From contig JANJGN010000071.1 in assembly GCA_026770705.1 (NCBI GenBank), positions 1,984,001 to 2,048,000 of the forward strand: 64,000 nucleotides of DNA. The letters run 5' to 3'. Position numbers and translations under genes: made by a program. How positions within the stretch are numbered: position 1 is the stretch's first letter; the number at the start of each line of letters is the position of its first letter. Source of the DNA: Isurus oxyrinchus (taxonomy: Eukaryota). Shown one piece after another: positions 1-64,000 of the stretch. The notes beneath the pieces are model-generated. The model was not told the origin of the DNA. It made no database searches and saw nothing but the letters and a program-made list of their open reading frames with translations.

Positions 1-9
1 CTGTGCAAG
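1..9 (+). CDS. Copy A: last bases of Siglec domain-2 (C2-set) exon
   Basis: ctgtgcaag|gtaagt is identical to the end of the complete C2 exon of copy D (45770-45778). Confidence 0.75.
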
Positions 10-3000
10 GTAAGTACGGACATCCTTCATTCCAGATTAGCTGGAATATTCTAGATTATGCATAGAAGGATCCCATAGAGAGGTATTGTGATGAGAAACA
101 GATCATCTGTTTTTTCGGGAAAATAGTGACCAGCACAACATTAATAACAGTTTCTGAACAGTAACACAGCGGCTTTTATTTCCAGCCAAGAGACCGATAG
201 AGCAGAGCAGGAATCACAATGTACTCACCCCCTGACAGTGCAGCACTCCCTCAGTACTGACCCTCTGACAGTGCAGCACTCCCTCAGCACTGACCCTCTG
301 ACAGTGCAGCACTCCCTCAGTACTGACCCTCTGACAGTGCAGCACTCCCTCAGTACTGACCCTCTGACAGTGCAGCACTCCCTCAGTACTGACCCTCCGA
401 CAGTGCAGCACTCCCTTAGTACTGATCATCCCACAGTGTAGCACTCCCTCTGTACAGACCCTCTGACAGTGCAGCACTCCCTCAGTACTCACCCTCCAAC
501 AGTGCAGCACTGCCTCAGGACTGACCCTCCGACAGTGCAGCACTCCCTCTATACTGACCCTCCAACAGTGCAGCACTCCTTCAGAACTGAACATTTGACA
601 GTGCAGCACTCCCTCAGTACTGACCCTCGGACAATGCAGCTCTCCCTCAATACTGACCCTCTGACAGTGCAGCACTCCCTCAGTACTGACCCTCTGACAG
701 GTCAGCACTCACTCCTTACTGAACTGAAGTGTCTGCCTGAATTGAGTGCTTTGTGGTGAAGGAACCTACATTGATATCACGCCTTTCACATTCTCAGTGT
801 CTCTCAAAGTGCTTCACAGTCAGTGTAAGTAACTGATCTTCATTTGTTTTCAGACACACCACAGAATCTCTCAATTACTTCTCTTGATATGATTAACGCT
901 TCATGGATCAATATAATTGAGGGGAATTCTGCAGTGATAATCTGCTCTGTCGAGAGCTTCCCAGCTTCTAACCTGACGTGGCGACATCTTAATGTCCCAA
1001 TGAACAGAACAAGTTCCAACAATGAGCTGTGGTTGGTGATTCCTCATGTTACATCCAGGGACACTGGAGACTATCAGTGTGTGGCAGAGAATGAACATGG
1101 AGCAGTGGAGGGGTTCATAACCATCACTGTGGAATGTGAGTTACACAGACTTCAACATCTCTCTCAGATTTGAACACATATACACAAATGATCAACCACA
1201 TGCACACACAAACACTCACTGCACTGGAGTCCCGGTGTCAGCTCTGATTCTGTGCTGAAGGAAGGTAAACTCCAGATCAACAAGACCCTGAATTGGATGA
1301 GCAACCTCCTGAACAGAGAAATGTAGATTTACACCTCAGTGCTCCATTGGTCAAATACAATTCATTGCCTGCCCAGCCCTTGGTGAAATACTGAGGATGT
1401 GAATGGAAGGTTCTTTCATTCTAGATGGACAGCACCTCAATGGGTGGGAGAATGTAACTGCAGTGTGACAGTTTACATAGGCAGTATCCATTGTAAATGT
1501 GACAGAGGAACGTATGCTGAGGAAGGTGCCTGGAATTGCATTCAGACATCAGATACAGAGAGATGATGCATGGAGTCTTGCTGTGCACTGTGATTGCTCA
1601 CATTAAAATCTTTATGTTTTTAGATGCCCCACAGAATCTCTCAATTACTTCTCTTGATATGATTAATGCTTCATCGATCAATATAATTGAGGGGAATTCT
1701 GCAGTGATAATCTGCTCTGTCGAGAGCTTCCCAGCTTCTAACCTGACGTGGCGACATCTTAATGTCCCAATGAACAGAACAAGTTCCAACAATGAGCTGT
1801 GGTTGGTGATTCCTCATGTTACATCCAGGGACACTGGAGACTATCAGTGTGTGGCAGAGAATGAACATGGAGCAGTGGAGGGGGTCATAACCATCACTGT
1901 GGAACGTGAGTTACACAGAATTGAACGTTCTCTTGTTATTAGCTCATGGGATGTGGGCATTGTTGACAAGACCAGAAATTATTGCGCATCTGTTACTGCC
2001 CCTTGAGAAGGTGGTGGTGAGCTGCCTTCTTTAACCATTGCAGTCCATGTGATGTAGGTACACCCACAGTGCTGTTAGGGAGGGTGTTCCAGGATTTTGA
2101 CCCAGCGACAGTGAAGGAACGGCTGATATAGTTCCAAGTCCCAGGGCAGACCACCACCACAAGTTCGCCTCCAAGTCACACACCTCACTGACTTGGAACT
2201 GTCTTGGTGGAAGAGGTTAAGGCTTTGGAAGGTGCTGTCGAAGGAGCCTCGGTGAGTTGCTGCAGTGCATCTTGTAGATGGTGCACACTGCTGCCATTGT
2301 GTGCCAGTGGTGGAGGGTATGAATGTTTATGCTGTGGATGGGCTGTCGATCAAACAAGCTGCTCCTGGATGGTGTTGAGCTTCTTGAGTGTTGTTGGAGC
2401 TGCACTTATTCAGGCAATTGGAGATTATTCCATCACACTCCTGACTTGTGCCTTGTCGATGGTGGACAGGCTTTGGAGAGTCAGGAGGTGAGTTACTCAC
2501 CACAGAGTTCCCAGCCTCTGACCCGCAGTTGTAGCCACATTATTTCCTCTTGCCGGGTTGTTGCCAGGGCCAATAGCCTTTGCTGTATCCAGTATCATCA
2601 GCTGATTCCTGATGTCACGTGGAGTCAATCGAATTGTCTGAAAGCTGACATCTGTGATGCTGGGACCCTCTGGAAGAGGCCGAGATGGATCATCCACTCA
2701 GCACTTCTGGCTGAACATGGTTGCCAATGCTTCAGCCTTGTCGTTTGCACTGATGTGCTGAGCTCCCCCATCATTAAGGATGGGGATATTTGTGGAACAT
2801 CCTCCTCCTGTTAGATCTTTAATTGTCCATCACCATTCATGACTGGATGTGGCAGGACTGCAGAGCTTAGATCTGACCCATTGGTTGTGGGATCGCTTTG
2901 CTCTGTCTATAGCATGTTGTTTCCACTGTTTGGTGTGTATGTAGTCCTGTGTGTCACCTCAGCAGCTTGGCACCTCTGTTATATGTGAATCCTCCTTATA

Positions 3001-6000
3001 GAAACCTGCATGTACATGGATATTATCAATAAATATTACATAGATAAATGTTATTTGTATAGATCTTTCATGCGTAGACAATATCACTTCACAAGTTCAG
3101 AATTACTACATGTACATAGGGAACCATTCTCAAACTGTACCGGAGTCATTCATTGGCTGATTTTACAGGGCGAGATTCCAATGAATGGAAAGCAGGATTG
3201 CTTGGAGCTGGAATCTGTTTGAGTGTTGGACTGAGTGGATTCTTCATCTTCAAGTGTGTGAGAAAGTAAGTGTGAAGGTTTAATTGGTTGTTTTTGAAAA
3301 TGTTTTCTTCAAACTTCTCTCCTTATAGAAAGAACTTGCATTTCTATAGCACCTTTCACAACACAAAACCCTTCACAGCCCCTGAAGAGCTTTGATGTTC
3401 ACTCACTGTTTCACATCTCATCCAACACTCACTGTTTCACAACTCAGTCCTGTAACAGGCAGTGTTGACCTGGACCATAAAATACCTTGTGACCTACTGA
3501 GGATGTGAAAGGTGCTATATAAATGAAAACCTTTCGTTTGTTAGTGAATGCAGTCTCTTTCCATTTTCCCTGTTGCATTCACTCTCTCTCTTATCTCTAC
3601 TAATGCTTTCCTTCTCATTCTCTCTCTCTCTCATTCACTCTCTCTCTTAACTCCACTAATGCTCTCCTTCTCATTCTCTCTCTCATTCACTCTCTCTCCA
3701 ATCTCCACTAATGCTCTCCTTCTCATTCTCTCTCTCATTCACTCTCTCTCCAGTCTCCACTAATGCTCTCCTTCTCATTCTCTCTCTCGTCCTCTTACAC
3801 ATTGTTCAGGATCTCACATTTTTAAGGAGCGCTGAGCAACATCTGCTCCTTCAGAAAATCCACCTCAACACCTGGAGTGAGCAGTGATTTGAAACTCGCT
3901 CAACGACTGTTCAACTTTACACAAGAATCACGTCACAGAGTCAGGACACAAAGAGTTAACAGTTTGCTTACAACACAAAACTAAGGCCCGACGTTTCAAT
4001 GAAAGGGTTTTCACAATTGTTCCCCAATTCCTGATTTGACTCACAGAGACACATCAACCGTTTCTCATTAAATACACAGAGGGAGCAGCACAGGAAGAGG
4101 TCATTCAGCCCAAGCAGAGCGTGTGGGCAGTTCCTCCCCAGGCGAGCAGTCGGACAGGTACTGGGTAAGTAACGGAACGATTGGAATTCACTTCCGCTAC
4201 CAACACCGTCCTTTGTTGATGTTGTGACTTTATAAAGACAGATTCCAATGATTGATGCCTTTGAAAGATTTCTACTGATGATTGAGATCTGGGTGTGAGG
4301 CTCAAGTCTGTTGTACAGAACATCTTTCTGGTTAAATTATGCAGACAGGTTACACACAGTCTACGATTATATTCCCTCAGGTCTAGGAGATTAAGGAGGG
4401 ATCTAACTGAGGGGTTCAAACTGATTAAACACTCGATAGGGTCGATAGAGAGAAGCTATTCCCTCGGGTGGGGGTGGGTGGTGGGGGTCGGGTGGAGTCC
4501 AGAACAAGGGGGCTGGAACTTCAGATTGGAGCCAGGCCATTCAGGGGTGATGTCAGGAAAAACTTCTTCACACAAAGGGGAGTGGAAATCTGGAACTCTC
4601 TCCCCAATAATCAAACCCAACACCGAATACACATCATGTTGATTGTCACTCTGTCCATTTCCATCTCTATTACAGAAGAGAGGCGAGGGGAAAGCAGGAA
4701 TCAAATCGAACCACCGTGTTGATGAATATCGAGGTCCTGTTTATGAAAACTGTGAGCGTGGTTGGGCTTTGAGGAATCAGGTGAGTCACACACCACAGGA
4801 TCCCCAGCCTCTCAGCTGCTCCAGTAGCCTGGTTATTGATATGGCTGCTCCAGTCCTGTATCTGCAATGTTTTATACAGTCACTCCCAAACCCAACCAAA
4901 CTCACACCTAACACCGTTCAGAATCAATAATCAAACCCCGATCAGTATCAATAATCAAACCCCATTCAGAATCAATAATCAAACCCCGCTCAGTATCAAT
5001 AATCAAACCCTGTTCAGAATCAATAATCAAACCCCATTCAGTATCAATAATCAAACCCCGTTCAGATTCAATAATCAAACCCCGCTCAGTATCAATAATC
5101 AAACCCTGTTCAGAATCAATAATCAAACCCCATTCAGTATCAATAATCAAACCCCGTTCAGATTCAATAATGAAACCCCGTTCAGTATCAATAATCAAAC
5201 CCCGTTCAGATTCAATAATCAAACCCCGTTCAGTATCAATAATCAAACCCCGTTCAGTATCAATAATCAAACCCCGTTCAGATTCAATAATCAAACCCCG
5301 TTCAGAATCAATAATCAAACCCCGTTCAGTATCAATAATCAAACCCCGTAAAGAATCAATAATCAAACCCCGTTCAGTATTAATAATCAAACCCCGTTCA
5401 GATTCAATAATCAAACCCCGTTCAGAATCAATAATCAAACCCCGTTCAGTATCAATAATCAAACTCTGTTCAGGATCAATAAACAAACACCGTTCAGAAT
5501 CAATAATCAAACCCCGTTCAGAATTAATTATCAAACCCCGTTCAATATCAATAATCAAACTTCGTTCAGGATCAATAATCGAACCCCGTTCAGAATCAAT
5601 AATCAAACCCCATTCAGTATCAAGAATCAAACCCCGTTCAGAATCAATAATCAAACCCCATTCAGTATCAATAATCAAACTTCGTTCAGGATCAAGAATG
5701 AAACACCGTTCAGATTCAATAATCAAACCCCTTTCAGAATCAATAATCAAACCCCATTCAGAATCAATAATCAAACCCCGTTCAGAATTAATTATCAAAC
5801 CCCGTTCAATATCAATAATCAAACTTCGTTCAGGATCAATAATCAAACCCTGTTCAGCATCAATAATCAAACCCCATTCAGTATCAATAATCAAACCCCG
5901 TTCAGTATCAATAATCAAACCCCGTTCAGAATCAATAATCAAACCCCGTTCAGTATCAATAATCAAACTTCGTTCAGTATCAATAATCAAACACCGTTCA

Positions 6001-7066
6001 GATTCTATAATCAAACCCCGTTCAGTATCAATAATCAAACCCCATTCAGAATAAAAAATCAAACCCCGTTCAGTATCAATAATCAAACCCCGTTCAGAAT
6101 CAATAATCATACCCCTTTCAGTATCAATAATCAAACCCCGTTCAGTATCAATAATCAAACCCCATTCAGAATTAAAAATCAAACCCCGTTCAGTATCAAT
6201 AATCAAACCCCGTTCAGAATCAATAATCAAACCCCGTTCAGTATCAATAATCAAACTTCGTTCAGTATCAATAATCAAACACCGTTCAGATTCTATAATC
6301 AAACCCCGTTCAGTATCAATAATCAAACCCCATTCAGAATAAAAAATCAAACCCCGTTCAGTATCAATAATCAAACCCCGTTCAGAATCAATAATCATAC
6401 CCCTTTCAGTATCAATAATCAAACCCCGTTCAGTATCAATAATCAAACCCCATTCAGAATTAAAAATCAAACCCCGTTCAGTATCAATAATCAAACCCCG
6501 TTCAGAATCAATAATCAAACCCTGTTCAGTATCAATAATCAAACACCGTTCAGAATCAATAATCAAACCCCGTTCAGTATCAATAATCAAACCCAGTTCA
6601 GAATTAATAATCAAACCCTGTTCAGTATCAATAATCAAACACCGTTCAGAATCAATCATCAAACCCCATTCAGTATCAATAATCAAACTTCGTTCAGGAT
6701 CAATAATCAATCCCCATTCAGTATCAATAATCAAACCTCATTCAGAATTAAAAATCAAACCCCGTTCAGTATCAATAGTCAAACGCCGCTCAGAATCAAT
6801 AATCAAACCCTGTTCAGTATCAATAATCAAACCCTGTTCAGTATCAATAATTAATGTTTCTATTATGGTTGGAATTTTCGATTTGGATCAATAATACTAA
6901 ACACTGATCACTCTGATTGTCACTCTGATCATTTCTGTTTCTATTACAGAAGAAAGATGAGAAGGATCTGGAAATGAAATCTAACCGCGGAGTCAATCCT
7001 GATACGGATGATGATCTTTACGCAAACTGTGAATTTGCCAAGGATTCTGTTTATGGGAATTTATAA
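1..7066 (+). CDS. Siglec-like gene copy A (3' part): C2 end - Ig - Ig - TM - three cytoplasmic exons with YxN motifs
   Basis: Exons <1-9, 854-1135, 1624-1905, 3169-3265, 4080-4164, 4676-4780 and 6950-7066 have AG/GT boundaries, compatible phases (1,1,1,2,0,0) and no internal stop. Leader and V exons lie upstream of the window. Confidence 0.8.
218..718 (+). repeat. 33-bp minisatellite (GACAGTGCAGCACTCCCTCAGTACTGACCCTCT)n
   Basis: Tandem units giving 11-aa periodic pseudo-ORFs. Confidence 0.95.
854..1135 (+). CDS. Copy A: Ig domain exon 3a (linker + C2/I-set)
   Basis: ttttcag|AC...GAAT|gtgag, 282 nt, phase 1-1. PQNLSI...IICSVESFPASNLTW...DTGDYQCVAENEHG carries the Ig C-W-DxGxYxC signature. 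Confidence 0.9.
1624..1905 (+). CDS. Copy A: Ig domain exon 3b (tandem duplicate of 3a)
   Basis: ttttag|AT...GAAC|gtgag, 282 nt, near-identical to 854-1135 at a 770-bp offset. Confidence 0.9.
1930..2975 (-). mobile_element. Degenerate CR1-group LINE fragments
   Basis: Antisense to 32600-33110-type sequence; minus-strand peptide LDTAKAIGPGN resembles the LINE KAxGPD motif. Duplicated at 48710-49730. Confidence 0.7.
3169..3265 (+). CDS. Copy A: transmembrane exon
   Basis: ttttacag|GG...AGAAA|gtaagt, phase 1-2. Encodes RDSNEWKAGLLGAGICLSVGLSGFFIFKCVRK and is homologous to 28870-28966. Confidence 0.85.
3575..3790. repeat. CT-rich tandem repeat (ctccactaatgctctccttctcattctctctc...)
   Basis: Several imperfect units of about 45 bp; copy at 50320-50530. 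Confidence 0.85.
4080..4164 (+). CDS. Copy A: probable first cytoplasmic exon
   Basis: acacag|A...TGG|gtaagt, phase 2-0, GSSTGRGHSAQAERVGSSSPGEQSDRYW. An alternative 4082-4157 is also phase 2-0. An exon of this phase is needed to join the TM exon to 4676. Confidence 0.55.
4676..4780 (+). CDS. Copy A: cytoplasmic exon with VYENC
   Basis: tattacag|AAG...CAG|gtgagt, phase 0-0, KRGEGKAGIKSNHRVDEYRGPVYENCERGWALRNQ. Confidence 0.75.
4912..6850 (+). repeat. 24-bp minisatellite (AATAATCAAACCCCGTTCAG[AA/TA]TC)n, about 80 units
   Basis: Intronic array between the two YxN exons, giving 8-aa periodic pseudo-ORFs. Confidence 0.97.
6950..7066 (+). CDS. Copy A: terminal cytoplasmic exon with LYANC and SVYGNL-stop
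   Basis: tattacag|AAG...TTA TAA, KKDEKDLEMKSNRGVNPDTDDDLYANCEFAKDSVYGNL*. Open in both A and D. Confidence 0.75.
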   Translation, partial: KKDEKDLEMKSNRGVNPDTDDDLYANCEFAKDSVYGNL

Positions 7067-8178
7067 ACTGAGCAAGAATGAGACACACACAGTGTGGGGA
7101 GAATACAGAACGGGAGAATCATTCAAAACTCTAACTTACCTTCCTAATATCCACAGGAACTCACTCCCAGGAAATAGATTTAAACCTCTTGTTACAATCT
7201 GATGGAATTTCTTCGGAATAATCTATCCAGGATGGTTGTCTGTGGGTTTCAATTCGAACATCCTCCTTCAGAATTGTCCCTCACTGTTGGAAACATCCTT
7301 CTCTCCATTCTGATTGTAAATGTCTTTAGATATCGTTCGATGATGTACCAGGACAGAACGGACAAATTCAATCCCGTGTCCGTGATTGAGTTAATTTTCA
7401 TTCTGTTATTCACCTTCCTGTCTGTCAGTGTTTACAGAATATTCATCAGCCAGTGTGGACTTCAGGAAATGCAGGATCGGTGGATAATTGGAGCAGAGGA
7501 GATTGGCAAAATTTACTCACGATTTTGTAGTGAAATGTATTTTCAGATATATATTTGGATTTTACACTTCATCGTTAAACAGCGAAACAAAGAAGAATCT
7601 GGGAAACAGGGAAACAATTTGATTGGAGATTTGAGAAATTCTCTGCAGCTCAGAGGATAACAGATGTGCTACAGTGCCACCACTGGTGGGAGGACATCAT
7701 TTCAGCGTGACATGTTTACATTCATGTTGCCAATGAACATTGAAAACTATGATGTGAAAAATTGTTTGCAGGTTTATCTTCTTCAATATGTCATGGATGG
7801 ATGAGACAGCTTTGATAACAGAATGAGATAGAGCTGCAATAAACCACCATTTTAGTCTTTCACACTTGGAGAGTACAATTAGCATCCATCCTGATGGTGA
7901 GTGGATGGGTGGACTGTGCGATGTGTTACAGATCACAGAGACCAACATACTCGATCCTGGTTCCGCTCTGTGTTTGATGAGATGCTTGATTCAAAGATTG
8001 GGAAAATAAATAATCCTCCTGCATTGATCTGTAACTGGTCATTTTCTCTGTTAATGAGGTGAGGACAGAATTGGGTTTGAGGTCCAAAATCAGACACATG
8101 CTTTAACTGCCCATTGAATAGGAACAGGAGGAGGCCATTCAGCCCCCTCGAGCCTGCTACACAGGAACAAGAGGGCAC

Positions 8179-8395
8179 CTGAAATAAGAACAGAAAATGC
8201 TGGAGAAACTGAGTAGGTCTGGCAGCATCTGTGCAGAGATAAACAGAAATAACATTTCGAGTCCGTATGACCCTTCTTCAGAGTCTCAAAGCAAAAACTC
8301 TGTTTCTCTCTCCACAGCTGCTGCCAGACCTGCTGAGTTAATGCAGCATTTTCTGTTTTTATTTCAGATTTACAGCATCTGCAGTATTTATTTTT
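8179..8395. mobile_element. Fold-back Penelope terminal-repeat remnant
   Basis: 8179-8247 and 8299-8367 are inverted copies; duplicate at 54537-54753. Confidence 0.7.
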
Positions 8396-8789
8396 AATGA
8401 GAGGAGGACATTCAGCCCCTCGAGCCTGTTACACAGGAACAGGAGGAGGCCCATTCTGTCCCCTTGAGCCAGTTACACAGGAACAGGAGGAGGCCCATTC
8501 TATCCCTTTGAACCTGTTACACAGGAACAGGAGGAGGCCCATTCACCCTCCTCGAGCCTATTACACAGGAACAGGAGGAGGCCCATTCTGTCCCCTTGAG
8601 CCTGTTACACAGGAACAGGAGGAGGCCCATTCACCCTCCTCGAGCCTGTTACACAGGAACAGGAGGAGGCCCATTCTGTCCCCTTGAGCCTGTTACACAG
8701 GTACAGGAGACCCATTCAGCCTCCACAAGCTTGTTACACAGGAACAATTGGGGTTCCATTCAGCCACTCAAGCCTGTTCCACATGAACG

Positions 8790-50819: not shown

Positions 50820-50904
50820 AGGGAGCAGCACAGGAAGAGGTCATTCAGCCCAAGCAGAGCGTGTGGGCAGTTCCTCCCCAGGCGAGCAGTCGGACAGGTA
50901 CTGG
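50820..50904 (+). CDS. Copy D: probable first cytoplasmic exon
   Basis: Same sequence as 4080-4164. Confidence 0.5.
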
Positions 50905-51415: not shown

Positions 51416-51520
51416 AAGAGAGGCGAGGGGAAAGCAGGAATCAAATCGAACCACCGTGTTGATGAATATCGAGGTCCTGTTTATGAAAACTGTGAGCGTG
51501 GTTGGGCTTTGAGGAATCAG
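51416..51520 (+). CDS. Copy D: cytoplasmic exon with VYENC
   Basis: Same sequence as 4676-4780. Confidence 0.7.
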
Positions 51521-51651
51521 GTGAGTCACACACCACAGGATCCCCAGCCTCTCAGCTGCTCCAGTAGCCTGGTTATTGATATGGCTGCTCCAGTCCTGTA
51601 TCTGCAATGTTTTATACAGTCACTCCCAAACCCAACCAAACTCACACCCAA

Positions 51652-53205
51652 CACCGTTCAGAATCAATAATCAAACCCCGTTCAGAATCAATAATCAAAC
51701 CCCGTTCAGAATCAATAATCACACCCCGTTCAGAATCAATAATCAAACCCTGTTCAGTATCAATAACCAAACTCCGTTCAGTAACAATAATAAAACCCGT
51801 TCAGAATCAATAATCAAACCCCGATCAGTATCAATAATCAAACCCCGTTCAGAATTAATAATCAAACCCCTTTCAGAATCAATAATCAATCCCCGTTCAG
51901 TATCAATAAACAAACCCCGTTCAGAATCAATAATCAAACCGCGTACAGAATCAATAATCAAACCCCGTTCAGTATACATAATCAAACCCCGTTTAGTATC
52001 AATAATCAAACCCCTTTCAGAATCAATAATCAATCCCCATTCAGTATCAATAAACAAACCCCGTTTAGAATCAATAATCAAACCCCGCTCAGTATCAATA
52101 ATCAAACCGCGTTCAGAATCAATAATCAAACCCCGTTCAGTATACATAATCAAACCCCGTTCAGTATCAATAATCAAACCCCGTTCAGTATCAATAATCA
52201 AACTCCGTTCAGGATCAATAATCAAACACCGTTCAGAATCAATAATCAAACCCCGTTCAATATCAATAATCAAACCCCGTTCAATATCAATAATCTAACT
52301 TCGTTCAGGATCAATAATCAAACCCCATTCAGATTCAATAATCAAAACCCTTTCAGAATCAATAATCAAACCCCATTCAGTATCAATAATCAAACCCCGT
52401 TCAGTATCAATAATCAAACCCCGTTCAGAATTAAAAATCAAACCCTGTTCAGTATCAATAATCTAATCCCGTTCAGAATCAATAATCAAACCCCGTTCAG
52501 AATTAAAAATCAAACCCCGTTCAGTATCAATAATCAAACCCCGTTCAGTATCAATAATCAAACCCCGTTCAGAATCAATAATCAAACCCTGTTCAGTATC
52601 AATAATCAAACTACGTTCAGGATCAATAATCAAACTCCGTTCAGATTCAATAATCAAAACCCATTCAGAATCAATATTCAAACCCCATTCAGCATCAATA
52701 ATCAAACCCCGTTCAGTATAAATATTCAAACCCCATTCAGAATCTATAATCAAACCCCGTTCAGAATTAATAATCAAACCTCGTTCAGAATCAATAATCA
52801 AACCACGTTCAGTATCAATTATCAAACCCCGTTCAGAATCAATAATCAAACCCCGTTCAGAATCAATAATCAAACCCCGTTCAGTATCAATAATCAAACC
52901 CTCTTCAGAATCAATTATCAAACCCCGTTCAGTATCAATAATCAAACCCCATTCACAATCAATAATCAAACCCCGTTCAGAATCAATAATCAAACCCCAT
53001 TCAGAATCAATAATCAAACCCCGTTCAGTATCAATAATCAAACCCTCTTCAGTATCAATAATCAAACCCCGTTCAGAATCAATAATCAAACCCCGTTCAG
53101 AATCAATTATCAAACCCTGTTCAGTATCAATAATCAAACCCCGTTCAGAATCAATTATCAAACCCTGTTCAGTATCAATAATCAAACCCTGTTCAGTATC
53201 AATAA
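51652..53205 (+). repeat. 24-bp minisatellite, about 65 units
   Basis: Paralog of 4912-6850. Confidence 0.96.
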
Positions 53206-53304
53206 TTAATGTATCTACTGTGGGTGCAATTTTTGATTTGGATCAATAATACTAAACACTGATCACTCTGATTGTCACTCTGATCATTTCTGTTTCTATT
53301 ACAG

Positions 53305-53421
53305 CAGAAAGATGAGAAGGATCTGGAAATGAAATCTAACCGCGGAGTCAATCCTGATACAGATGATGATCTTTACGCAAACTGTGAATTTGCTGAGGAT
53401 TCTGTTTATGGGAATTTATAA
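53305..53421 (+). CDS. Copy D: terminal cytoplasmic exon (LYANC, SVYGNL*)
   Basis: QKDEKDLEMKSNRGVNPDTDDDLYANCEFAEDSVYGNL*. Confidence 0.7.
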   Translation, partial: QKDEKDLEMKSNRGVNPDTDDDLYANCEFAEDSVYGNL

Positions 53422-54479
53422 ACTGAGCAAGAATGAGACACACACAGTGTGGGGAGAATACAGAACGGGAGAATCATTCAAAACTCCAATTTACCTTCCT
53501 AATATCCACAGGAACTCACTCCCAGGAAATAGATTTAAACCTCTTGTTACAATCTGATGGAATTTCTTCGGAATGATCTATCCAGGATGATTTTCTGTGG
53601 GTTTCAATTCGAACATCCTCCTTCAGAATTGTCCCTCACTGTTGGAAACATCCTTCTCTCCAATCTGATTGTAAATGTCTTTAGATATCGTTCGATGATG
53701 TACCAGGACAGAACGGACAAATTCAATCCCGTGTCCTTGATTATGAGTTAATTTTCATTCTGTTATTCACCTTCCTGTCTGTCAGTGTTTACAGAATATT
53801 CATCAGCCAGTGTAGACTTCAGGAAATGCAGGATCGGTGGATAATTGGAGCAGAGGAGATTAGTAAAATTTACTCACCATTTTGTAATCAAATGTATTTT
53901 CAGATATATATTTGGATTTTACACTTCATCGTTAAACAGCGAAATAAACAAGAATCTGGGAAACAGGGAAACCATTTGATTGGAGATTTGAGAAATTCTC
54001 TGCAGCTCAGAGGATAACAGATGTGCTACAGTGCCACCACTGGTGGGAGGACATCATTTCAGCGTGACATGTTTACATTCATGTTGCCAATGAACATTGA
54101 AAACTATGATGTGAAAAATTGTTTGCAGGTTTATTTTCTTCAGTATGTCATGGATGGATGAGACAGCTTTGATAACAGAATGAGATATAGCTGCAATAAA
54201 CCATCATTTTAGTCTTTCACACTTGGAGAGTACAATTAGCATCCATCCTGAAGGCTGAGTGGATGGGTGGACTGTGCGATGTGTTACAGATCACAGAGAC
54301 CAACATACTCGATCCTGGTTCCGCTCTGTGTTTGATGAGATACTTGATTCAAAGATTGGGAAAATAAATAATCCTCCTGCATTGATCTGTAACTGGTCAT
54401 TTTCTCTGTTAATGAGGTGAGGACAGATTTGGGTTCGAGGTCCAAAATCAGACACATGCTTTGACTGCCCATTGACTCG

Positions 54480-56290
54480 GAACAGGAGGAGGCCATTCAG
54501 CCCCCTCGAGCCTGCTACACAGGAACAAGAGGGCACCTGAAATAAAAACAGAAAATGCTGGAGAAACTGAGTAGGTCTGGCAGCATCTGTGCAGAGATAA
54601 ACAGAAATAACATTTCGAGTCCGTATGACCCTTCTTCAGAGTCTCAAAGCAAAAACTCTGTTTCTCTCTCCACAGCTGCTGCCAGACCTGCTGAGTTAAT
54701 GCAGCATTTTCTGTTTTTAGTTCAGATTTACAGCATCTGCAGTATTTATTTTTAATGAGAGGAGGACATTCAGCCCCTCGAGCCTGTTACACAGGAACAG
54801 GAGAAGGCCCATTCTGTCCCCTTGAGCCAGTTACACAGGAACAGGAGGAGGCCCATTCTATCCCTTTGAACCTGTTACACAGGAACAGGAGGAGGCCATT
54901 CAGCCCCCTCGAGCCTGTTACACAGGAACAGGGGGAGGCCCATTCAGCCCCTCGAGCCTGTTACGCAGGAACAGGAGGAGGCCCATTCAGCCCCCTCGAG
55001 CATGTTACACAGGAACAGGAGGAGGCCCACTCAGTCCCCTCAAGCTTGTTACACAGGAACAGGAGGAGGCCCATTCTGCCCCTCGAGCCTATAACACAGG
55101 AAAAGGAGGAGGCCCATTCAGCCCCATGAGCCTGGTACACAAGGAGACAAGGAGGCCATTCAGCCCCCCTGAGCCTGTTGCACAGGAAAACGAGGAGGCC
55201 CATTCAGCCTCTCAAGCTTATTACCCAGGAACAGGAGGAGGTCCATTCAGCCCCTCGAGCCTGTTACACAGGAACAGGAGGAGGCCCACTCTGCCCCATG
55301 AGCCTGGTACACAGAGAGAAGGAGGCCATTCAGCCCCCCTGAGCCTGTTGCACAGGAAAAGGAGATCCATTCAGCCCCTCGAGCTTGTTACACAGGAACA
55401 GGAGGAGGTTCATTCAGCCCCCTCGAGCCTGTTACACAGCAACAGGAGGAGGCCCATTCAGCCCCCTCAAGCCTGTTGCACAGGAACAGGAGGAGGCCCA
55501 TTCAGCCCCCTCGAGCCTGTTACACAGGAACAGGAGGAGGCCCACTCAGCCCCATGAGCCTGGTACACAGAGAGAAGGAGGCCATTCAGCCCCCCTGAGC
55601 CTGTTGCACAGGAAAAGGAGACCCATTCAGCCCCTCGAGCTTGTTACACAGGAACAGGAGGAGGTCCATTCAGCCCCTCGAGCCTGTTACACAGGAACAG
55701 GAGGAAGTCATTCAGCCCCCTTGAACCTATAACACAGGAACAGGAGGAGGCCATTCAGCCCTCTCGAGCTTGTTACACAGGAACAGGGGGAGGCCCATTC
55801 AGCCTCCTCAGACATGTTACATAGGAACAGGAGGAGGCCCATTCAGCCTCCTCAGACATGTTACATAGGAACAGTAAGAGGACATTCAATTCCTCAACCC
55901 TCTTTACTGGAGCAGTAAACACATTCAGCCTCCTTGTGCCTGTTACACAAGAACAGGAGGAGGTCCATTCAGCCCCTCAAGTCAGTGACATAGGAACAGG
56001 AGAAGTCTCATTCAGCCACACGAGCATCTTATATAAGAACATGAGGGGGCCCAAACAGCCCCTCAAGCCTCTTACACAAGAAGAGGAGGAGGAGGTTCAT
56101 TCAGTCCATCGAGGCTGTTACACAGGGACAGGAGGAGGCCCATTCAGCCACATGAGCCTGTTACACAGGGACTGGAGGAGGCCCATTCAGCTCCCTCGAA
56201 CATGTTACTCTTGAACACGAGGAGGTGCATACAGTCCCTCAAGCCTGTTACACTGGAACAGGAGGAGGCCCAGTCAACCCCTCGAGCCTC
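54480..56290 (+). repeat. 43-44-bp minisatellite
   Basis: Paralog of 8120-10985 without the 8790-9625 insertion. Confidence 0.9.
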
Positions 56291-56948
56291 TTGCATGTGA
56301 ACAGTCGATGGCCCTTCAACCACATTCTTGGTACGCAAAGGGTTAACAGTTTTCTAACTGTGCGAGGCAAAGAGCTGCTTTCTAACTTGGTACCAAGCAC
56401 TTCCTCATTTTGTCTCACAGTGACACATCAACCCTTTCTCATTAAACACACAGAGGGAGCAGCACAGGAAGAGGTCATTCAGCCCAAGCAGAGCGTGTGG
56501 GCAGTTCCTCCCCAGGCGAGCAGTCGGACAGGTCCTGGGTAAGTAACGGAACGATTGGAATTCACTTCCACCACCAACACCGTCCTTTGTTGATGTTGTG
56601 ACTTTATAAAGACAGATTCCAATGATTGATGCCTTTGAAAGATTTCTACTGATTATTGAGATCTGGGTGTGAGGCTCAGGTCTGTTGTACAGAACATCTT
56701 TCTAGCTCAAGGGATGAGGGAAGAGCAGGGACATGAGATTTGGGACGTCCTGAGATAGTGAAAGGTGCTACAGAAATGCAAGTCCTTCATTGTTTTTCTT
56801 TCTTAAAGCCTTGTAACTCTCTGCAGAACACCTATCATCCCACAGAGAATCAAATTAGTCTGTGAAGACATTGTCTAAAAGCAGTTCTGATCTCTCGAGA
56901 GCTGTCGGACAAGAGGTGAGGTCTCATTAACTCCTTTCTCTTTCACAG

Positions 56949-57027
56949 CTTGAGAGTGAGAAGTGGATGGAATATCTGGGAGTGGACGATGATCGGGAAA
57001 TCTACTTCCTCTTGTCACTTCTCCAAG
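56949..57027 (+). CDS. Copy E: leader exon; upstream ATG 56967 in frame, canonical ATG 56989 out of frame
   Basis: tctac versus tcttac in paralogs; MEYLGVDDDREIYFLLSLLQ|gtaat, phase 1. Confidence 0.6.
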
Positions 57028-57730
57028 GTAATATCATCGTCAGCTCGGATAGATTTATGTTTAACAGTCTTTGTAAAAGATCATTCATATCTCTTTATCT
57101 CTGTAACCTCCTGCAACTCACCCAAACAACTTCCCAGATCTCTGTGTTACTCCAATTCCGGCCTCTTGACCATCCCCCGATTCCCATCACTCCAATACTG
57201 GCGGCCGGGCCTTCAGCTGCCTGGGGCCTGAGCTCTGGAATTCACTCCCTAAACCTCGGGGATGGAGGAGCTCAGAGGGTTTCATTTTACTGAGAATCAC
57301 CACGACCACATCACAGCTGCAGTGAGAATAGACAGAGGGTCCAGCCCTCACACTTCCTGCACAGTTTCACCATAGCAACCACAATATGGAAATTTAAAAA
57401 TACTGAAAGTTAAACTGAAGCTCAAACCAGTCAGTTTAGAGAGATGAGATGTTTACACAGTTTCCCTGTGTGTCTTGTAGACACTGTGTTGGGTGGAAGA
57501 CTGGCTTCACTAAACAGGGTCCTGAGGACCATGAGCCAATGTAGAATGAACTTGTCCACTCCTGTGTCCAGGATTCTCTTCCCTCCGTTGTGAAACCTTG
57601 GGGAGTTCCTTGTGCGTCCTGTAGATGGTCCACACTGCAGCCACTGTGCCCCAGTGATGGAGGGGGTGGATATCGAGTCTAGTGGATCTACAAACTATCC
57701 AGAGTTAAATATTGATATTTCTCTCCCCAG

Positions 57731-58105
57731 TTGGACTGTCACAAGAGTGGAAAGGTGACACTCCCCGAGAGGTTGCAGCACAGGAAGGCTCGTGTGTACA
57801 GATTCCATGTCATTACAGTTACTCATCAAATTTAGTAGGGAGATCGCGTGTCAGAATCTGGTTGAAAGGAATAGATGTGAATCCACAGCCTAAATGGTCT
57901 ATAGCCTTTCACTCCGAAGGTCACAGTCACAGGGATCAAAGATTCCACCATCGGACCCGGCTGTCAGGAGCCCTGAAAGATGGCGACTGTTCCCTGATTA
58001 TAAACAACATCAGACAGGAAGATGCAGGACCTTATTTTTTCAGAATAGAATTTGACAATGGTCCGAGCCATAACTATTACCCTGTAACCCAGCTTCACGT
58101 TTCTG
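57731..58105 (+). CDS. Copy E: Siglec V-set exon
   Basis: Intact, 375 nt, contains YFFRIE, near-identical to the V exon of copy B. Confidence 0.9.
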
Positions 58106-58964
58106 GTAAGTGCTGTGTTATAATTACTCAACAATTCACATTCAACACTCAATGGGAAATAACACAAACTGTGACATTTACATATTAACACAAAACACAG
58201 CTTATTATAACACGCTACCTGATTCTCAATAACCTGGTGATAGCTTCCAGTTCAGTCCTAAAGCAACCTCTAATACTCACTTTAATATCAATGATTAAAA
58301 GCATTAACTGTATTATCAGGTTATCCACTCCCATCAATCTCTCCTGTCCTGTTTAAAAGTCTGACGTATCGATAAAAGAAAGATGTGCATTTCTGCAGCG
58401 CAATTTACCACCTCAGGAGGATCCAAATCCCTTCACAGCCAATGAAATTATTCCTAAATTGTAGTCACAGATGTAAAACACAGCAGGCAGTTTGTGCACA
58501 GCAAGATCCAACAAACCACAAGGTGCTAAATCACCTAGATCACTGAGGAAATGAAAAGCCAGTGAACAGAAACCTCTGGTCTGATGAAGAGTCATACGGA
58601 CTCGAAACGTTAACCCTGTCTTCCTCTCCACTGATACTGTCAGACCTGCTGAGTCTTTCCAGCAATTTTTGTTTTTGTTTCAGATTTCCAGCATCCACAG
58701 TATTCTGCTTTTAACTCCAATCTCTGGTCTGAGCCTCTTCTCTCATCCAGTGTTCTCAATTCACATGTCTCGGAGTGAACGTGTATTAAGCTGAGAGACA
58801 GAAACACTACTGCCAAAGAGCAAGAAAATCTTTCCTGATCATTGTAACCTCTCAGTTCTGATATCATCCTTGTAAAAGTGCTTTCTCTTGTGGGACTGTG
58901 ATTTCTATTTGAACTGATGCTTCACGTTATATTTTTCTAAAAGGATCCATTCTCCGTCTGTTAG

Positions 58965-59261
58965 ATTTCACAGATAAACCCACGATATTCCCTGCTGAAA
59001 TTATTGCAGGAAAGCGTGTGGATGTAAGCTGCACCTTCAACACAACGTGCAATGGAACAGCAGCACCTGTCTTAACCTGGGACACTCCCACTGACGTACC
59101 TGGATCAGTCTCAAACACTGTAACTCAGCATGGTGTCACTCTGACCTATACTTCTGTTCTGACCCTGACCCCATCACTCAAACACCACGGACACACTCTC
59201 AGCTGCAGAGTGAGATATCCATCTGTTTCATCGGAGCGGACCCTTGTACTAACTGTGCAAG
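58965..59261 (+). CDS. Copy E: C2-set exon
   Basis: Intact, 297 nt, phase 1-1. Confidence 0.9.
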
Positions 59262-59584
59262 GTTAGTATGGACACCCTTCATTCTACATCAGCACTCCCT
59301 CAGCGCTGACCCTCTGACAGTGCAGCCCATTCTCAGTATCCACATTCTAAGGCCTCTCAAAGTGCTTCACAGTCGATAGAAGTTAATTGATCTTTATTTG
59401 ATTATTGCTGAATGAAGAGACAAGCTGTCTAAAGTTTACATCTCGCACACACCATTCTCCATGGCAACACCTCCACCTATCAGAGACCACTTGCCAACCA
59501 ATCAGCACTCTCCTCCCGTTAAGTATAAATTGTTGTTCACTTTCTGTTGGTAATCCTGCGAACGTGCTTCTTGATTCCTGCCAT

Positions 59585-59737
59585 GACATCTTAATGTCCA
59601 AATGAACAGAACAAGTTCCAACAATGAGCTGTGGTTGGTGATTCCTCACGTTACATCCAGGGACACTGGAGACTATCAGTGTGTGGCAGAAAATGAACAT
59701 GGAGCAGTGGGGGTTTTCATAACCGTCACTGTGGAAC
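59585..59737 (+). pseudogene. Copy E: 3' half of Ig3 exon
   Basis: Same lesion as 14278-14430. Confidence 0.8.
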
Positions 59738-61408
59738 GTGAGTGTACACAGACTTCAACATCTCTCTCAGATTCAAACATTACACAAACACCCTCAAATA
59801 TACAGAACTAAATAGACACGTGCAGACACACATGTATGAGCAATTACAAAGACACACTCACGAACAAACACACTAGCACACACTCCCCTGTGGTTTACCT
59901 GAGTACTGCACTGGAGAGTTGGCCAGGATTCTGGGATTTGTGTTCCCATTCATATTTATGGAAGAATATGGAAATTGCAAAGTCTATTACAGACACTCAG
60001 ATGCATAGAGGCACTCACAGATACTCTCTGCCTCTCCAACTCTCTCTCTCCCTTTAAGAAGCTTCCTGAAAGCTAACCCTTCGAACAATCACCGGTCCCA
60101 ACTCCTCCTTATCTGATTCTGTGTGATTTTGTTTGTGTATCTGAGAGTAAGAGAGAGGTGGAGAGGTTTAGTTAGAGAATTCCTGCTGGTGAAAAGCTTA
60201 CATCATTTACTCACCTTTCCAGTGCACATATTTCCCAGTATGTCCAATGCCCCTGTTTATAATGATGACTGCCTATGTAAACGTCACGCTGTAGTTACAT
60301 TCTCCCACCAGTGGTGGCATTGTAGCACTTAATTCTTGTTTTTCCCAGCTTTTCAAGCAACTCCACTTCCCAGTTTGCTACACAAGCTGTGAGTTCATCA
60401 GAATTAAATTATTTCTCAAATGATAGATTTGATAATTCATTTTATTGAAAACTTCCTCAGCGCCTCCTTGAAGGGTTCACACTCTCTGGGAAGCAGGAAT
60501 AGGCTGGATGTTGGGGAGGTCATCTTTTCCCAGAGAGTAGGGATCCTTGAGAATGTGCTGTCAGTGGGTGTGGTAGTTCCTGTTTCTCTGTCGCCTTCAA
60601 GAGGGATCTGGAGTGGTTACTGACTGGGGGAGAGATCATGGAAGTGGAGAATGATACAGCACAGGAGGAGGCCATTCAGCCCATTGTGCCTGTGCCAGGT
60701 CTTTCAATTTTCTATCCAATCAGATCCACTAACCACCACTCCACTTTGCCACCATCATCCTCCTTCAAGTGTTTATCCAATTTCCCTTTTGAAAGTTCCT
60801 ATTGCATCTGCTTCCAGCGCCCTTTCAGGCAGAACCTTCCAGATCACAACAACTCGCTCTGTCAAAACAAATTCTCCTCATCTCCACCTCCGGTTCGTCA
60901 ATCTTGTCCCTCTGGTTACCGACCCTCCTGCCTCTTAAATACATCGATACTGTTCACCTCAACCACTCCCAGTGATAGCGAGTTCCACATTCTCCCCTCT
61001 CTCTGGGTAAAGATTGGAACTGTTTATTAAGCGGGGGGTGTAAGTCCGTGGGGGAGTCCATCTCGATCCTGCCCGATTCACACACACGTCCGAGATGGAT
61101 TTCCACGCTGCACTAAACGTTTCCAGAATTTTCTACAGCACAATCCTGTACACAGCGATGGAGAGAAACATTGGACAGGGAGTCCAACAGCACAATGATC
61201 CATTCTCACCAATGTTCCACGCTAAGGGGAAAGTTCCGATTGTCCACTCTTAGAGTGTTTACAATGAAAACATTCATTCCACATTGAATCCCAGTGGATG
61301 GGTCAATATTACAGCAAATGTTGCAGTGATATGAAGCTTGATTGTTCAGCCAGAGTGAGAGATTGAAAGCGGAGAGTCAGTGATGATTTCTTTCTGTGTG
61401 TTCTCTAG

Positions 61409-61548
61409 ACAGTGGAGGAGAGATTCTGCACGTGATCCTGATCCTGGGAATACGAGCTGTGATATTCCTTGTGGCTGTGGTTATCACTATCGCTGGAGTC
61501 TGTGTCTGGGAGAGACAAACAGTGAAAGGAAGTCGACAGACTGTTTGA
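61409..61548 (+). CDS. Copy E: activating-type TM + short tail exon (Arg in TM)
   Basis: SGGEILHVILILGIRAVIFLVAVVITIAGVCVWERQTVKGSRQTV*; Arg codon at 61453-61455. Confidence 0.78.
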
Positions 61549-63950: not shown

Positions 63951-64000
63951 TGCTGTGTGAGTTGTTTCAATCAAGACTGGTGCACAAAGAGGGAGGTTTC

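What the first reader, a model, noticed from the sequence alone, without database searches (positions are those of the whole stretch)
1..61548. Tripartite paired-Siglec system: one shared ectodomain kit wired to inhibitory, activating and YxN-adaptor tails
Seen: five tandem genes share near-identical leader, V, C2 and Ig3 exons, and the Arg-bearing YFFRIE motif is present in all four V exons. They end in three different modules: LLYANI+TEYAQI (C); VYENC/LYANC/SVYGNL (A, D); and a TM with an internal Arg plus a 12-aa tyrosine-free tail (B, E). Established: mammalian CD33-related Siglecs form inhibitory/activating pairs (Siglec-5/14, Siglec-11/16) in which the activating partner has a basic TM residue for DAP12. 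Inference: this is an equivalent, probably lineage-specific, paired receptor cluster in what appears to be a cartilaginous fish, with a third signalling class added. I cannot check whether it has already been described.
Basis: partly seen in the sequence, partly recalled or inferred. Interest (0 to 1): 0.9.

Follow-up and report, generated by a model that had tools for sequence, protein, structure and literature searches.

The report
Shark Siglec cluster, three tail types
This stretch of a shark genome holds five tandem copies of Siglec-type (sialic-acid-sensing) immune receptor genes that combine similar outer parts with a 'brake' tail, an 'accelerator' membrane anchor or a third tyrosine-rich tail, but most copies in this window carry disabling mutations.

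Summary
Four V exons carry YFFRIE, and there are three tail modules: ITIM plus TEYAQI; an Arg-containing TM with a 12-residue tail; and a YxN tail.

The V exon is a Siglec V-set domain by Pfam, PDB sequence search and a confident fold model. RefSeq models from other sharks and rays show the same three tail classes. Spliced RNA contigs join leader to V, V to C2, and C2 directly to the Arg-TM exon.

The picture needs correcting in four ways.
- There are only three gene types here, because a roughly 16-kb segmental duplication (93-96% identical) made A+B and D+E.
- The ectodomains are not uniform. The B/E and C/D V exons are 95-100% identical at the edges but only 58-65% identical in a central patch of about 140 nt.
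- C has no C2 exon in the read letters, and B/E keep only half an Ig3 exon.
- Lesions: B has a stop in the leader, C a stop in Ig4, and D a stop in V plus a lost Ig3 donor. E has a leader frameshift that an upstream ATG may rescue.

Relationship to the mammalian CD33-related Siglecs is unresolved. Grb2, DAP12 and sialic-acid binding are all inferred, not shown.

The scan has already flagged and followed up this family on other pieces of the same genome. I found no paper describing it.

The parts
854..1135 (+). Gene A (5' part lies outside the window): Ig3 exon, copy a
   Evidence: AG/GT borders, 282 nt, open frame. 88% identical to the Mustelus Siglec model P0005 by tblastn.
1624..1905 (+). 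Gene A: Ig3 exon, copy b (tandem exon duplicate)
3169..3265 (+). Gene A: uncharged TM exon
   Evidence: 97% identical to the TM of the Carcharodon CD33-like model P0011. Borders.
4080..4164 (+). Gene A: cytoplasmic exon 1
   Evidence: Matches P0011 and P0007. Borders.
4676..4780 (+). Gene A: cytoplasmic exon 2, holding VYENC. Its inclusion in mRNA was not tested.
   Evidence: CAG|..|GTGAGT borders, phase 0-0. A counterpart exists in the bamboo shark model P0007 but is absent from the great white model P0011.
6950..7066 (+). Gene A: last coding exon with LYANC, SVYGNL and the stop
11683..11722 (+). Gene B: leader exon with an in-frame TAA at 11710-11712
   Evidence: Leader-to-V splice 11722|12425 seen in RNA contigs.
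12425..12799 (+). Gene B: V-set exon with YFFRIE. The central patch, about 12504-12650, differs from C and D.
13658..13954 (+). Gene B: C2-set exon
   Evidence: Pfam C2-set_2. PDB matches to domain 2 of MAG and CD33. V-to-C2 splice 12799|13658 seen in four runs.
14280..14430 (+). Gene B: remnant of the Ig3 exon. Only the 3' half remains, the acceptor is lost, and spliced contigs skip it.
16102..16223 (+). Gene B: Arg-TM exon, 12-residue tail and stop. It has an 18-nt deletion relative to E and to other sharks.
   Evidence: C2-to-TM splice 13954|16102.
19823..19862 (+). Gene C: leader exon, intact
20725..21093 (+). Gene C: V-set exon with YFFRIE
24267..24526 (.). Assembly gap inside gene C's V-to-Ig3 intron, where a C2 exon would be expected. 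Left unfilled.
   Evidence: No C2 match between 21.1 and 24.9 kb.
24941..25222 (+). Gene C: Ig3 exon
27327..27620 (+). Gene C: membrane-proximal Ig exon with an in-frame TGA at 27365-27367
28870..28966 (+). Gene C: uncharged TM exon
29844..29925 (+). Gene C: cytoplasmic exon
30637..30885 (+). Gene C: tail exon with LLYANI (ITIM), TEYAQI (ITSM-type) and the stop. The exact acceptor was not settled.
   Evidence: Aligns to the C-terminus of Tupaia CD33.
42297..42336 (+). Gene D: leader exon, intact
44713..45081 (+). Gene D: V-set exon with YFFRIE and an in-frame TAA at 45045-45047
45482..45778 (+). Gene D: C2-set exon
48429..48700 (+). Gene D: Ig3 exon that has lost its last bases and its splice donor
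49923..50019 (+). Gene D: uncharged TM exon
50820..50904 (+). Gene D: cytoplasmic exon 1
51416..51520 (+). Gene D: cytoplasmic exon 2 (VYENC)
53305..53421 (+). Gene D: last coding exon (LYANC, SVYGNL, stop)
56967..57027 (+). Gene E: leader exon. A 1-nt deletion breaks the usual ATG (56989) frame. The upstream ATG at 56967 is then in frame and reaches the donor in phase 1.
57731..58105 (+). Gene E: V-set exon with YFFRIE
58965..59261 (+). Gene E: C2-set exon
59587..59737 (+). Gene E: Ig3 remnant (3' half only)
61409..61548 (+). Gene E: Arg-TM exon (long form), 12-residue tail and stop
   Evidence: Loose ends at 16170 in run X1 carry the E-type 18-nt insert.
1924..18530 (+). Segmental duplication, copy 1 (rest of A, plus B)
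   Evidence: Self-BLAST, 93-96% identity to 48695-63854.
48695..63854 (+). Segmental duplication, copy 2 (rest of D, plus E)

Best explanation
The window is a slice of a large, fast-turning-over Siglec multigene cluster of a shark. The nearest proteins come from lamniform and other sharks.

**How the genes are built.** Every gene is assembled from the same phase-1 exon types: leader, Siglec V-set with the canonical Arg, C2, and further Ig exons. Each ends in one of three old, interchangeable membrane/tail modules:
1. An uncharged TM plus an ITIM and a TEYxxI motif (gene C).
2. A TM with a buried Arg and a 12-residue tail (genes B and E).
3. An uncharged TM plus a tail ending in two YxN tyrosines 11 residues apart (genes A and D).

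**How they probably work (inferred from established Siglec and paired-receptor biology).**
- The V domain binds sialylated glycans through the Arg.
- Module 1 recruits SHP-type phosphatases and inhibits.
- Module 2 pairs through its Arg with an acidic residue in an ITAM adaptor (DAP12- or FcR-gamma-like) and activates.
- Module 3 docks Grb2-type SH2 proteins, or acts as an ITAM-like motif.

**How the locus evolved.** The pattern is birth-and-death evolution. A roughly 16-kb block (A+B) was duplicated to give D+E. Short patches of the V exon were exchanged between paralogues. Exons were duplicated or lost. Several copies have decayed: B and D are dead, C is damaged or incomplete, E may be rescued, and A is only partly visible.

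**Shown here:** the anatomy, the Siglec fold, conservation of the tails, and splicing of C2 to the Arg-TM exon.

**Inferred:** ligand, adaptors, signalling direction, and which copies are translated.
For: **Exon map and borders:**

**Segmental duplication:**

**Siglec identity**
- Pfam V-set, Ig_CD22 and C2-set_2.
- The best PDB sequence matches are sialoadhesin, Siglec-5, MAG, Siglec-8/10/7 and CD33. The Arg aligns to the sialoadhesin FRFE arginine, and the A-strand Trp and the Cys pattern are kept.
- The C2 exon matches domain 2 of MAG and CD33.
- The AlphaFold model of the B V exon has pLDDT 86. All listed Foldseek hits through rank 42 are Siglec V domains, TM 0.71-0.86.

**Homologues with the same three tails**
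- Cetorhinus P0003 and Mustelus P0005 carry the ITIM tail.
- Scyliorhinus P0006 and P0049 and Chiloscyllium P0021 carry the Arg-TM.
- Chiloscyllium P0007, Carcharodon P0011, Rhinoraja, Hypanus, Hemitrygon and Mobula carry the YxN tail.

**RNA contigs with GT..AG joints at the predicted borders**
- 11722|12425
- 12799|13658, in four runs
- 13954|16102, in two runs

**V-domain tree:** all three tail classes are mixed within one shark/ray clade, and V domains group by lineage rather than by tail.

**Mosaic V exon:**

**Lesions:**
Against: - No binding, adaptor or signalling data exist.
- The RNA evidence is weak in several ways:
  - the runs are coded and their RNA status is a guess;
  - they are kept as short contigs laid at 90% likeness or more;
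  - the joint sides for C2-to-TM are only 27-30 nt;
  - they cannot tell B or E from paralogues elsewhere.
- Splicing of genes A, C and D was not tested.
- Gene C's unity crosses an assembly gap.
- The lesions rest on one assembly that has gaps, and some could be errors or alleles.
- B/E and C differ in the presumed ligand loops, so they may not see the same ligand.
Confidence: 0.8

Rival explanations
1. This window is a graveyard. All complete units here are pseudogenes, and the working inhibitory, activating and YxN receptors are encoded elsewhere in the cluster. On this reading no 'tripartite system' operates from this locus.
For: - B has a leader stop, C an Ig4 stop with no C2 exon, D a V stop and a lost Ig3 donor, and E a leader frameshift.
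- B has an 18-nt deletion in its TM relative to every other Arg-TM exon.
- The spliced contigs were accepted at 90% likeness or more, so they may come from paralogues.
Against: - E regains a full frame from the upstream ATG at 56967, and E-type TM letters are seen in run X1.
- All of A's visible exons are open.
- C's damaged exon is a symmetric phase 1-1 exon that could be skipped, as some RefSeq isoforms lack it.
Confidence: 0.3
2. The third tail is not a Grb2 adaptor tail. It is an intrinsic, non-canonical ITAM-like activating motif, with two tyrosines 11 residues apart and the last one four residues from the C-terminus, that recruits a tandem-SH2 kinase of the Syk type.
For: The Y-Y spacing of 11 (10 in one skate protein) and the terminal YxN[ILVM] are conserved in nine of the ten aligned tails; the great white model keeps the spacing but has YKS at the first site. 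Acidic residues precede the first tyrosine.
Against: - The +3 residue of the first tyrosine is C, F or W rather than L or I.
- Both tyrosines sit in YxN, the Grb2 SH2 consensus.
- The last motif in this window (SVYGNL) also fits the loose ITIM consensus.
- No binding data exist.
Confidence: 0.3
3. The tandem A+B / D+E arrangement and the lesions are assembly artefacts, for example collapsed or mis-joined haplotypes, or indel and base errors near gaps.
For: The window has five N gaps next to CA repeats. E's lesion is a single-base deletion.
Against: - The two blocks differ by 4-7%.
- They also differ structurally: an 800-bp deletion that fuses the Ig3 exons in D, an 18-nt indel in the TM, and different lesions.
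- Three of the four lesions are substitutions, and none lies next to a gap.
Confidence: 0.08
4. The family keeps the Siglec fold and the Arg but no longer reads sialic acid. It would instead bind protein or other ligands, as proposed for some mammalian Siglecs.
For: Nothing here tests binding. The central V patch is hypervariable between paralogues.
Against: The Arg in YFFRIE, the A-strand Trp and the Siglec Cys pattern are kept in all four V exons and across shark homologues.
Confidence: 0.12

Closest known systems
Human Siglec-5 / Siglec-14 (and Siglec-11 / Siglec-16) paired receptors
   Same: - The ectodomain is V-set plus C2.
- One partner has a tail with an ITIM and an ITIM-like motif. 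The other has a basic TM residue and a short tail.
- The partners are neighbouring genes, with sequence exchange between them. The definition of a paired receptor is taken from PMC6288428.
   Different: - Here the V exons of the activating (B/E) and inhibitory (C) copies differ strongly in a central patch of about 140 nt, whereas the human partners have highly homologous ectodomains that recognise similar ligands (PMC6288428).
- The adaptor is unknown.
- The host is a cartilaginous fish.
- A third tail class is present.
- Several copies are broken.
Mammalian and tetrapod CD33-related Siglecs (e.g. CD33)
   Same: - The domain order is the same.
- The C-terminal arrangement is the same, ELxYAxxxF ... 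TEYxxIR. Gene C's tail aligns to the very end of Tupaia CD33.
- The genes form a rapidly evolving tandem cluster with pseudogenes.
   Different: - The V domains form their own shark/ray clade, outside the well-supported tetrapod clade in the free tree.
- A joint clade is not rejected (p-AU 0.63).
- Synteny was not tested.
CD22 (Siglec-2) and Siglec-10 cytoplasmic YxN (Grb2-type) sites
   Same: A YxN tyrosine sits in a Siglec tail. Shark, ray and turtle CD22-like models among the hits carry DYENV/DYENI or VYENM motifs.
   Different: In A and D the tail has two or three YxN sites. The only ITIM-type match is SVYGNL, under the loose consensus. The tail ends in a conserved YxN-x7-YxN unit. That CD22 itself binds Grb2 is from my own knowledge and was not checked here.
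RefSeq gene models of other chondrichthyans (e.g. Cetorhinus XP_078389734, Carcharodon XP_041037180, Scyliorhinus torazame XP_072326180 and XP_072325011, Chiloscyllium GCC37911)
   Same: These are direct homologues, with the same exon types and the same three tails.
   Different: They are automatic predictions named after whichever human Siglec scored best. I found no published analysis of them.

Membership tests
Siglec family | N-terminal V-set Ig domain with the Siglec fold | tested here: met
   - Pfam V-set, E = 3e-14, and Ig_CD22 at 39.5 bits against a cut-off of 27.
- AlphaFold model with pLDDT 86; all listed Foldseek hits through rank 42 are Siglec V domains.
Siglec family | Conserved F-strand arginine that binds the sialic-acid carboxylate | tested here: met
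   YFFRIE is in all four V exons. The Arg aligns with the FRFE arginine of sialoadhesin and the FFRVE arginine of Siglec-5.
Siglec family | Unusual cysteine pattern: an intrasheet disulfide plus an extra Cys in the V domain, with a partner Cys in domain 2 | tested here: met
   - SCVQIPC ... DCSL is kept in all V exons and aligns to sialoadhesin SCLLIPC ... VCNL.
- The cysteines are nearly invariant in alignment A3.
- The C2 exon has the extra Cys pair.
- The bonds themselves are not shown.
Siglec family | Binding of sialylated glycans | not testable with these tools
   Needs recombinant protein and a glycan array.
CD33-related Siglec subgroup | V domain groups with CD33-related Siglecs rather than with Siglec-1, CD22, MAG or Siglec-15 | tested here: inconclusive
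   - In the free tree the shark/ray clade is separate from the tetrapod CD33-related clade (SH-aLRT 99) and lies weakly beside the shark CD22-like V domains.
- The tree that forces shark plus tetrapod CD33-related sequences together is not rejected, p-AU 0.63.
- Only 121 columns were usable.
CD33-related Siglec subgroup | Membrane-proximal ITIM plus membrane-distal ITIM-like TEYxxI/V at the C-terminus | tested here: met
   Gene C carries LLYANI and TEYAQI. Its tail aligns to the last 32 residues of Tupaia CD33, E = 0.001. Shark CD22-like tails also end in xEYxxIRF, so this feature is not exclusive.
CD33-related Siglec subgroup | Conserved synteny with the tetrapod CD33-related cluster | not tested
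   There are no flanking non-Siglec genes in the window.
Paired activating/inhibitory receptors (Siglec-5/14 type) | Highly homologous ectodomains likely to see the same ligand | tested here: not met
   B/E and C are 95-100% identical over 1.7 kb, except for 58-65% identity in 12504-12650 inside the V exon. Overall V exon identity is 82-84%.
Paired activating/inhibitory receptors (Siglec-5/14 type) | Opposing signalling modules: ITIM tail versus basic TM residue with a short tail | tested here: met
   Met at sequence level only.
Paired activating/inhibitory receptors (Siglec-5/14 type) | The activating partner associates with an ITAM adaptor (DAP12 / FcR-gamma) | not testable with these tools
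   No shark adaptor sequence was to hand, and a paper search gave nothing.
Paired activating/inhibitory receptors (Siglec-5/14 type) | The activating form is made as mRNA | tested here: met
   GT..AG joint 13954|16102 in runs X1 and X6. The same junction is in catshark model P0049. The copy of origin is not resolved.
Grb2-type YxN docking tail | Tyrosine followed by Asn at +2, phosphorylated and bound by the Grb2 SH2 domain | tested here: inconclusive
   The motifs are present and conserved in sharks and rays. Phosphorylation and binding were not testable.

The most novel reading that the evidence does not exclude
Cartilaginous fishes have an ancient three-way Siglec signalling system: ITIM tail, Arg-TM adaptor-coupled form, and an intrinsic YxN / ITAM-like tail. 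The system shares ancestry with the tetrapod CD33-related Siglecs. Paired, and in fact triple, Siglec signalling would then date to early jawed vertebrates and would have been lost or reduced in teleosts, rather than being a late tetrapod invention.
Probability: 0.35. Interest if true: 0.75.

Novelty: new variant of a known kind. Interest (0 to 1): 0.55.

Why it matters
- A teleost study states that fish genomes lack CD33-related, ITIM-bearing Siglecs (PMC7226832). Paired Siglecs are described in the review read here (PMC6288428) only for the human pairs Siglec-5/14 and Siglec-11/16.
- A shark and ray family with the CD33-type tail, an Arg-TM partner and a conserved third tail would make two things testable: the origin of inhibitory/activating Siglec pairing, and of glycan 'self' sensing more generally.
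- It also offers a natural set of V domains that differ mainly in one loop patch.
- The value of this particular window is lower. The family is already auto-annotated in several shark genomes. The scan has met it repeatedly in this genome. Most copies here are damaged.

Tried and rejected
- **Papers on shark Siglecs.** Searches with siglec plus shark, cartilaginous, chondrichthyan, catshark and teleost found no description of this family. The whale shark genome paper only lists Siglecs among Ig families. A DAP12/FcR-gamma search for cartilaginous fish gave nothing usable.
- **A C2 exon for gene C.** tblastn with shark models finds none between 21.1 and 24.9 kb. It may lie in the gap, which I did not fill.
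- **Coding exons between C and D (31-44 kb).** Only repeats, retroelement fragments and gaps are there.
- **V-domain phylogeny to place the family.** The deep nodes are unresolved.
- **Joined spliced models.** Exons were handled one by one by reference. The only joining was frame arithmetic, plus one preceding base added in a local script to translate the Arg-TM exon.
- **Complex prediction.** Not used, because no shark adaptor sequence was available.

Full report
**What is in the window**

The 64-kb window has five N gaps and many minisatellites. A self-comparison shows that block 1924-18530 recurs at 48695-63854 at 93-96% identity.

I mapped exons by three routes:
- open frames;
- paralogue alignments;
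- tblastn with shark proteins found here.

All Ig-type exons have AG/GT borders and are symmetric phase 1-1.

| Gene | Exons in the window |
|---|---|
| A (5' part outside the window) | two Ig3 exons, uncharged TM, three cytoplasmic exons |
| B and E | leader, V, C2, half an Ig3 exon, Arg-TM exon |
| C | leader, V, [gap], Ig3, a membrane-proximal Ig exon, uncharged TM, two cytoplasmic exons |
| D | leader, V, C2, one Ig3 exon, then the same TM and cytoplasmic exons as A |

**Checking the observation**

The Arg-TM exons end in ERQTVKGSRQTV and a stop.

The claim of near-identical shared exons holds only in part.
- V exons B/E are 97.6% identical and C/D 90.8%, but the two pairs are only 82-84% identical to each other.
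- Over a 1.7-kb block B and C are 95-100% identical. The exception is 12504-12650 inside the V exon, at 58-65%.
- I infer that this patch encodes the loops between the B and D strands, which set ligand specificity in known Siglecs. That point rests on my own knowledge.
- Such a sharp island cannot have arisen by point mutation in the time that left the introns 95-100% identical. Short-tract exchange with a more distant paralogue is the likely cause (inference).
- C2 exons exist only in B, D and E.
- In B and E the 5' half and the acceptor of the Ig3 exon are replaced by unrelated sequence. D's Ig3 exon has lost its last bases and its donor.

**Assembly gaps**

None of the gaps interrupts an exon. 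Gap 24267-24526 is flanked on its left by a CA microsatellite. It lies in gene C's V-to-Ig3 intron, where the C2 exon should be. Two things therefore cannot be decided: whether C has a C2 exon, and whether its V exon and its ITIM tail are truly contiguous.

| Gene | Lesion |
|---|---|
| B | leader has TAA at 11710-11712 |
| E | leader lacks one base, so the usual ATG (56989) runs out of frame |
| C | membrane-proximal Ig exon has TGA at 27365-27367 |
| D | V exon has TAA at 45045-45047 |

In E, an upstream ATG at 56967 is in frame after the deletion. It reaches the donor in phase 1 and keeps the hydrophobic core of the signal peptide. In B and D the same ATG starts only a short upstream ORF. 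B also has an 18-nt deletion in its TM relative to E and to every other shark Arg-TM exon.

My reading of each gene:
- B and D are dead.
- C is damaged or incomplete.
- E may be alive.
- A's visible exons are open.

**What the genes are**

- The V exon matches Pfam V-set and the CD22-like first-Ig family above their cut-offs, and the C2 exon matches C2-set_2.
- Against PDB sequences, the best 15 matches are all Siglecs. The Arg of YFFRIE aligns to the ligand-binding arginine of sialoadhesin, and the A-strand Trp and the cysteines are kept.
- The C2 exon matches domain 2 of MAG, CD33 and Siglec-8/10/5, but also nectins.
- An AlphaFold model of B's V exon, built on 30 homologues, has pLDDT 86. 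All listed Foldseek PDB hits through rank 42 are Siglec V domains, TM 0.71-0.86.

**Relatives**

A HMMER scan of 1.8 billion representatives found 1070 relatives. The closest are RefSeq or GenBank models from these taxa:
- sharks: Scyliorhinus, Cetorhinus, Mustelus, Carcharodon and Chiloscyllium;
- rays and skates: Hypanus, Hemitrygon, Pristis, Rhinoraja and Mobula.

They are named Siglec-8/12/13/14, CD33-like or MAG-like. All three tail classes recur among them.
- The ITIM/TEY tail of Cetorhinus P0003 is 84% identical to gene C's tail.
- The Arg-TM exon is 73-80% identical to that of Scyliorhinus, and also occurs in Chiloscyllium.
- The YxN tail exon is conserved in sharks, skates and rays. 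Its Y-Y spacing is 11 (10 in one skate protein), and the last tyrosine lies four residues from the end.

C-terminal YxN motifs also occur in shark, ray and turtle CD22-like models, and in Siglec-like proteins of Arapaima, Megalops, Centroberyx and frogs.

**Expression**

One reads call was available and I spent it on gene B. The four runs, from four studies, are coded; their RNA status is a guess, and they are kept as contigs. They show GT..AG joints exactly at the predicted borders:
- leader to V, 11722|12425, in two runs;
- V to C2, 12799|13658, in all four runs. One 258-nt contig shows a single mismatch;
- C2 directly to the Arg-TM exon, 13954|16102, in runs X1 and X6, skipping the Ig3 remnant.

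Loose ends at 16170 carry the E-type 18-nt insert. Catshark model P0049 has the same C2-to-TM junction.

There are caveats. Contigs were accepted at 90% likeness or more. The joint sides are 27-30 nt for the key joint. Paralogues elsewhere in the genome cannot be excluded. A, C and D were not tested.

**Place in the Siglec family**

I built a V-domain tree of 120 rows and 121 columns.
- All window copies fall in a shark/ray clade of 38 rows. The three tail classes are intermixed there, and V domains group by lineage rather than by tail. This fits old tail modules combined with ectodomains that are repeatedly duplicated or homogenised.
- Tetrapod CD33-related Siglecs form a separate, well-supported clade. 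Named members are Tupaia CD33, Rhinopithecus Siglec-12 and frog and turtle models.
- In the free tree the shark clade sits weakly beside the shark CD22-like V domains.
- A tree that forces shark and tetrapod CD33-related sequences together is not rejected, and even scores higher (p-AU 0.63).
- Gene C's tail aligns to the very C-terminus of Tupaia CD33, but shark CD22-like tails end similarly.

Orthology with the CD33-related group therefore stays open.

**How it most likely works**

Shown here: the anatomy, the fold, the conservation and one splice pattern.

Inferred from established Siglec and paired-receptor biology (PMC6288428, PMC7226832 and my own knowledge):
- The Arg-bearing V domain binds sialosides.
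- The ITIM/TEY tail recruits SHP phosphatases.
- The buried Arg pairs with an acidic TM residue of a DAP12- or FcR-gamma-like ITAM chain.
- The YxN tail docks Grb2-type SH2 domains. Alternatively, given its ITAM-like spacing, it docks a Syk-type kinase.

The last motif here (SVYGNL) also fits the loose ITIM consensus.

**Novelty**

- A teleost study states that fish lack CD33-related Siglecs (PMC7226832).
- I found no paper on the shark family.
- The genes are nonetheless auto-annotated in RefSeq.
- The scan has already noted the family many times in this genome, with follow-ups.

I rate this a new variant of a known kind. Interest is moderate, and is lowered for this window because most copies are damaged.

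Noticed in passing
window 12504-12650 (and the same part of the V exons at 20804-20945, 44792-44933, 57810-57956): A hypervariable island sits inside otherwise 95-100% identical 1.7-kb blocks. B/E versus C are only 58-65% identical here. This looks like short-tract exchange of the presumed ligand-loop region between paralogues.
   Followed up: partly
window 11152-11232, 19280-19372, 41783-41863, 56458-56538: Copies of the A/D-type cytoplasmic exon 1 lie a few hundred bases upstream of each leader exon (tblastn with P0011 and P0007). The ancestral duplication unit probably ran from one gene's tail into the next gene's promoter.
   Followed up: partly
window 11661-11726, 42275-42340, 56967-57027: A short upstream ORF (MEYLGVD...) overlaps the leader ATG in B and D. 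In E the 1-nt deletion fuses this upstream ATG to the signal-peptide core. C lacks the upstream ATG.
   Followed up: partly
window 4908-6851 and 51646-53206: A 24-bp tandem repeat array of about 1.6-1.9 kb fills the intron between the VYENC exon and the last exon of A and D (self-BLAST offsets are multiples of 24).
   Followed up: no
window 214-722, 17663-18530, 29964-30485, 41076-41411, 45973-46787, 47679-48304, 62987-63953: A 33-bp minisatellite family recurs in introns and between genes. It reads as long false ORFs on both strands.
   Followed up: no
window 8397-10983 and 54757-56305: Tandem arrays with a period of about 43-44 bp lie upstream of the B and E leaders, inside the duplicated block.
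   Followed up: no
window 16568-16993 (-), 61893-62318 (-), 47013-47579 (+), 32015-32584 (+), 22488-23299: By eye, these ORFs look like fragments of LINE-type reverse transcriptase and an integrase-like ORF, in introns and spacers (no domain search was run). The insert at 22.4-23.3 kb sits where gene C's C2 exon would be expected.
   Followed up: no
window 854-1135 and 1624-1905 versus 48429-48700: Gene A has two tandem Ig3 exons. D has one, apparently made by a deletion of about 800 bp between the two copies that also removed the donor.
   Followed up: partly
P0013, P0156, P0056, P0082 (Pristis pectinata): Sawfish models of this family and CD22-like models lie on one 10.2-Mb contig with neighbouring accession numbers. 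One MAG-like model (P0082) shares this family's leader sequence. This hints that the cluster neighbours CD22-like genes.
   Followed up: no
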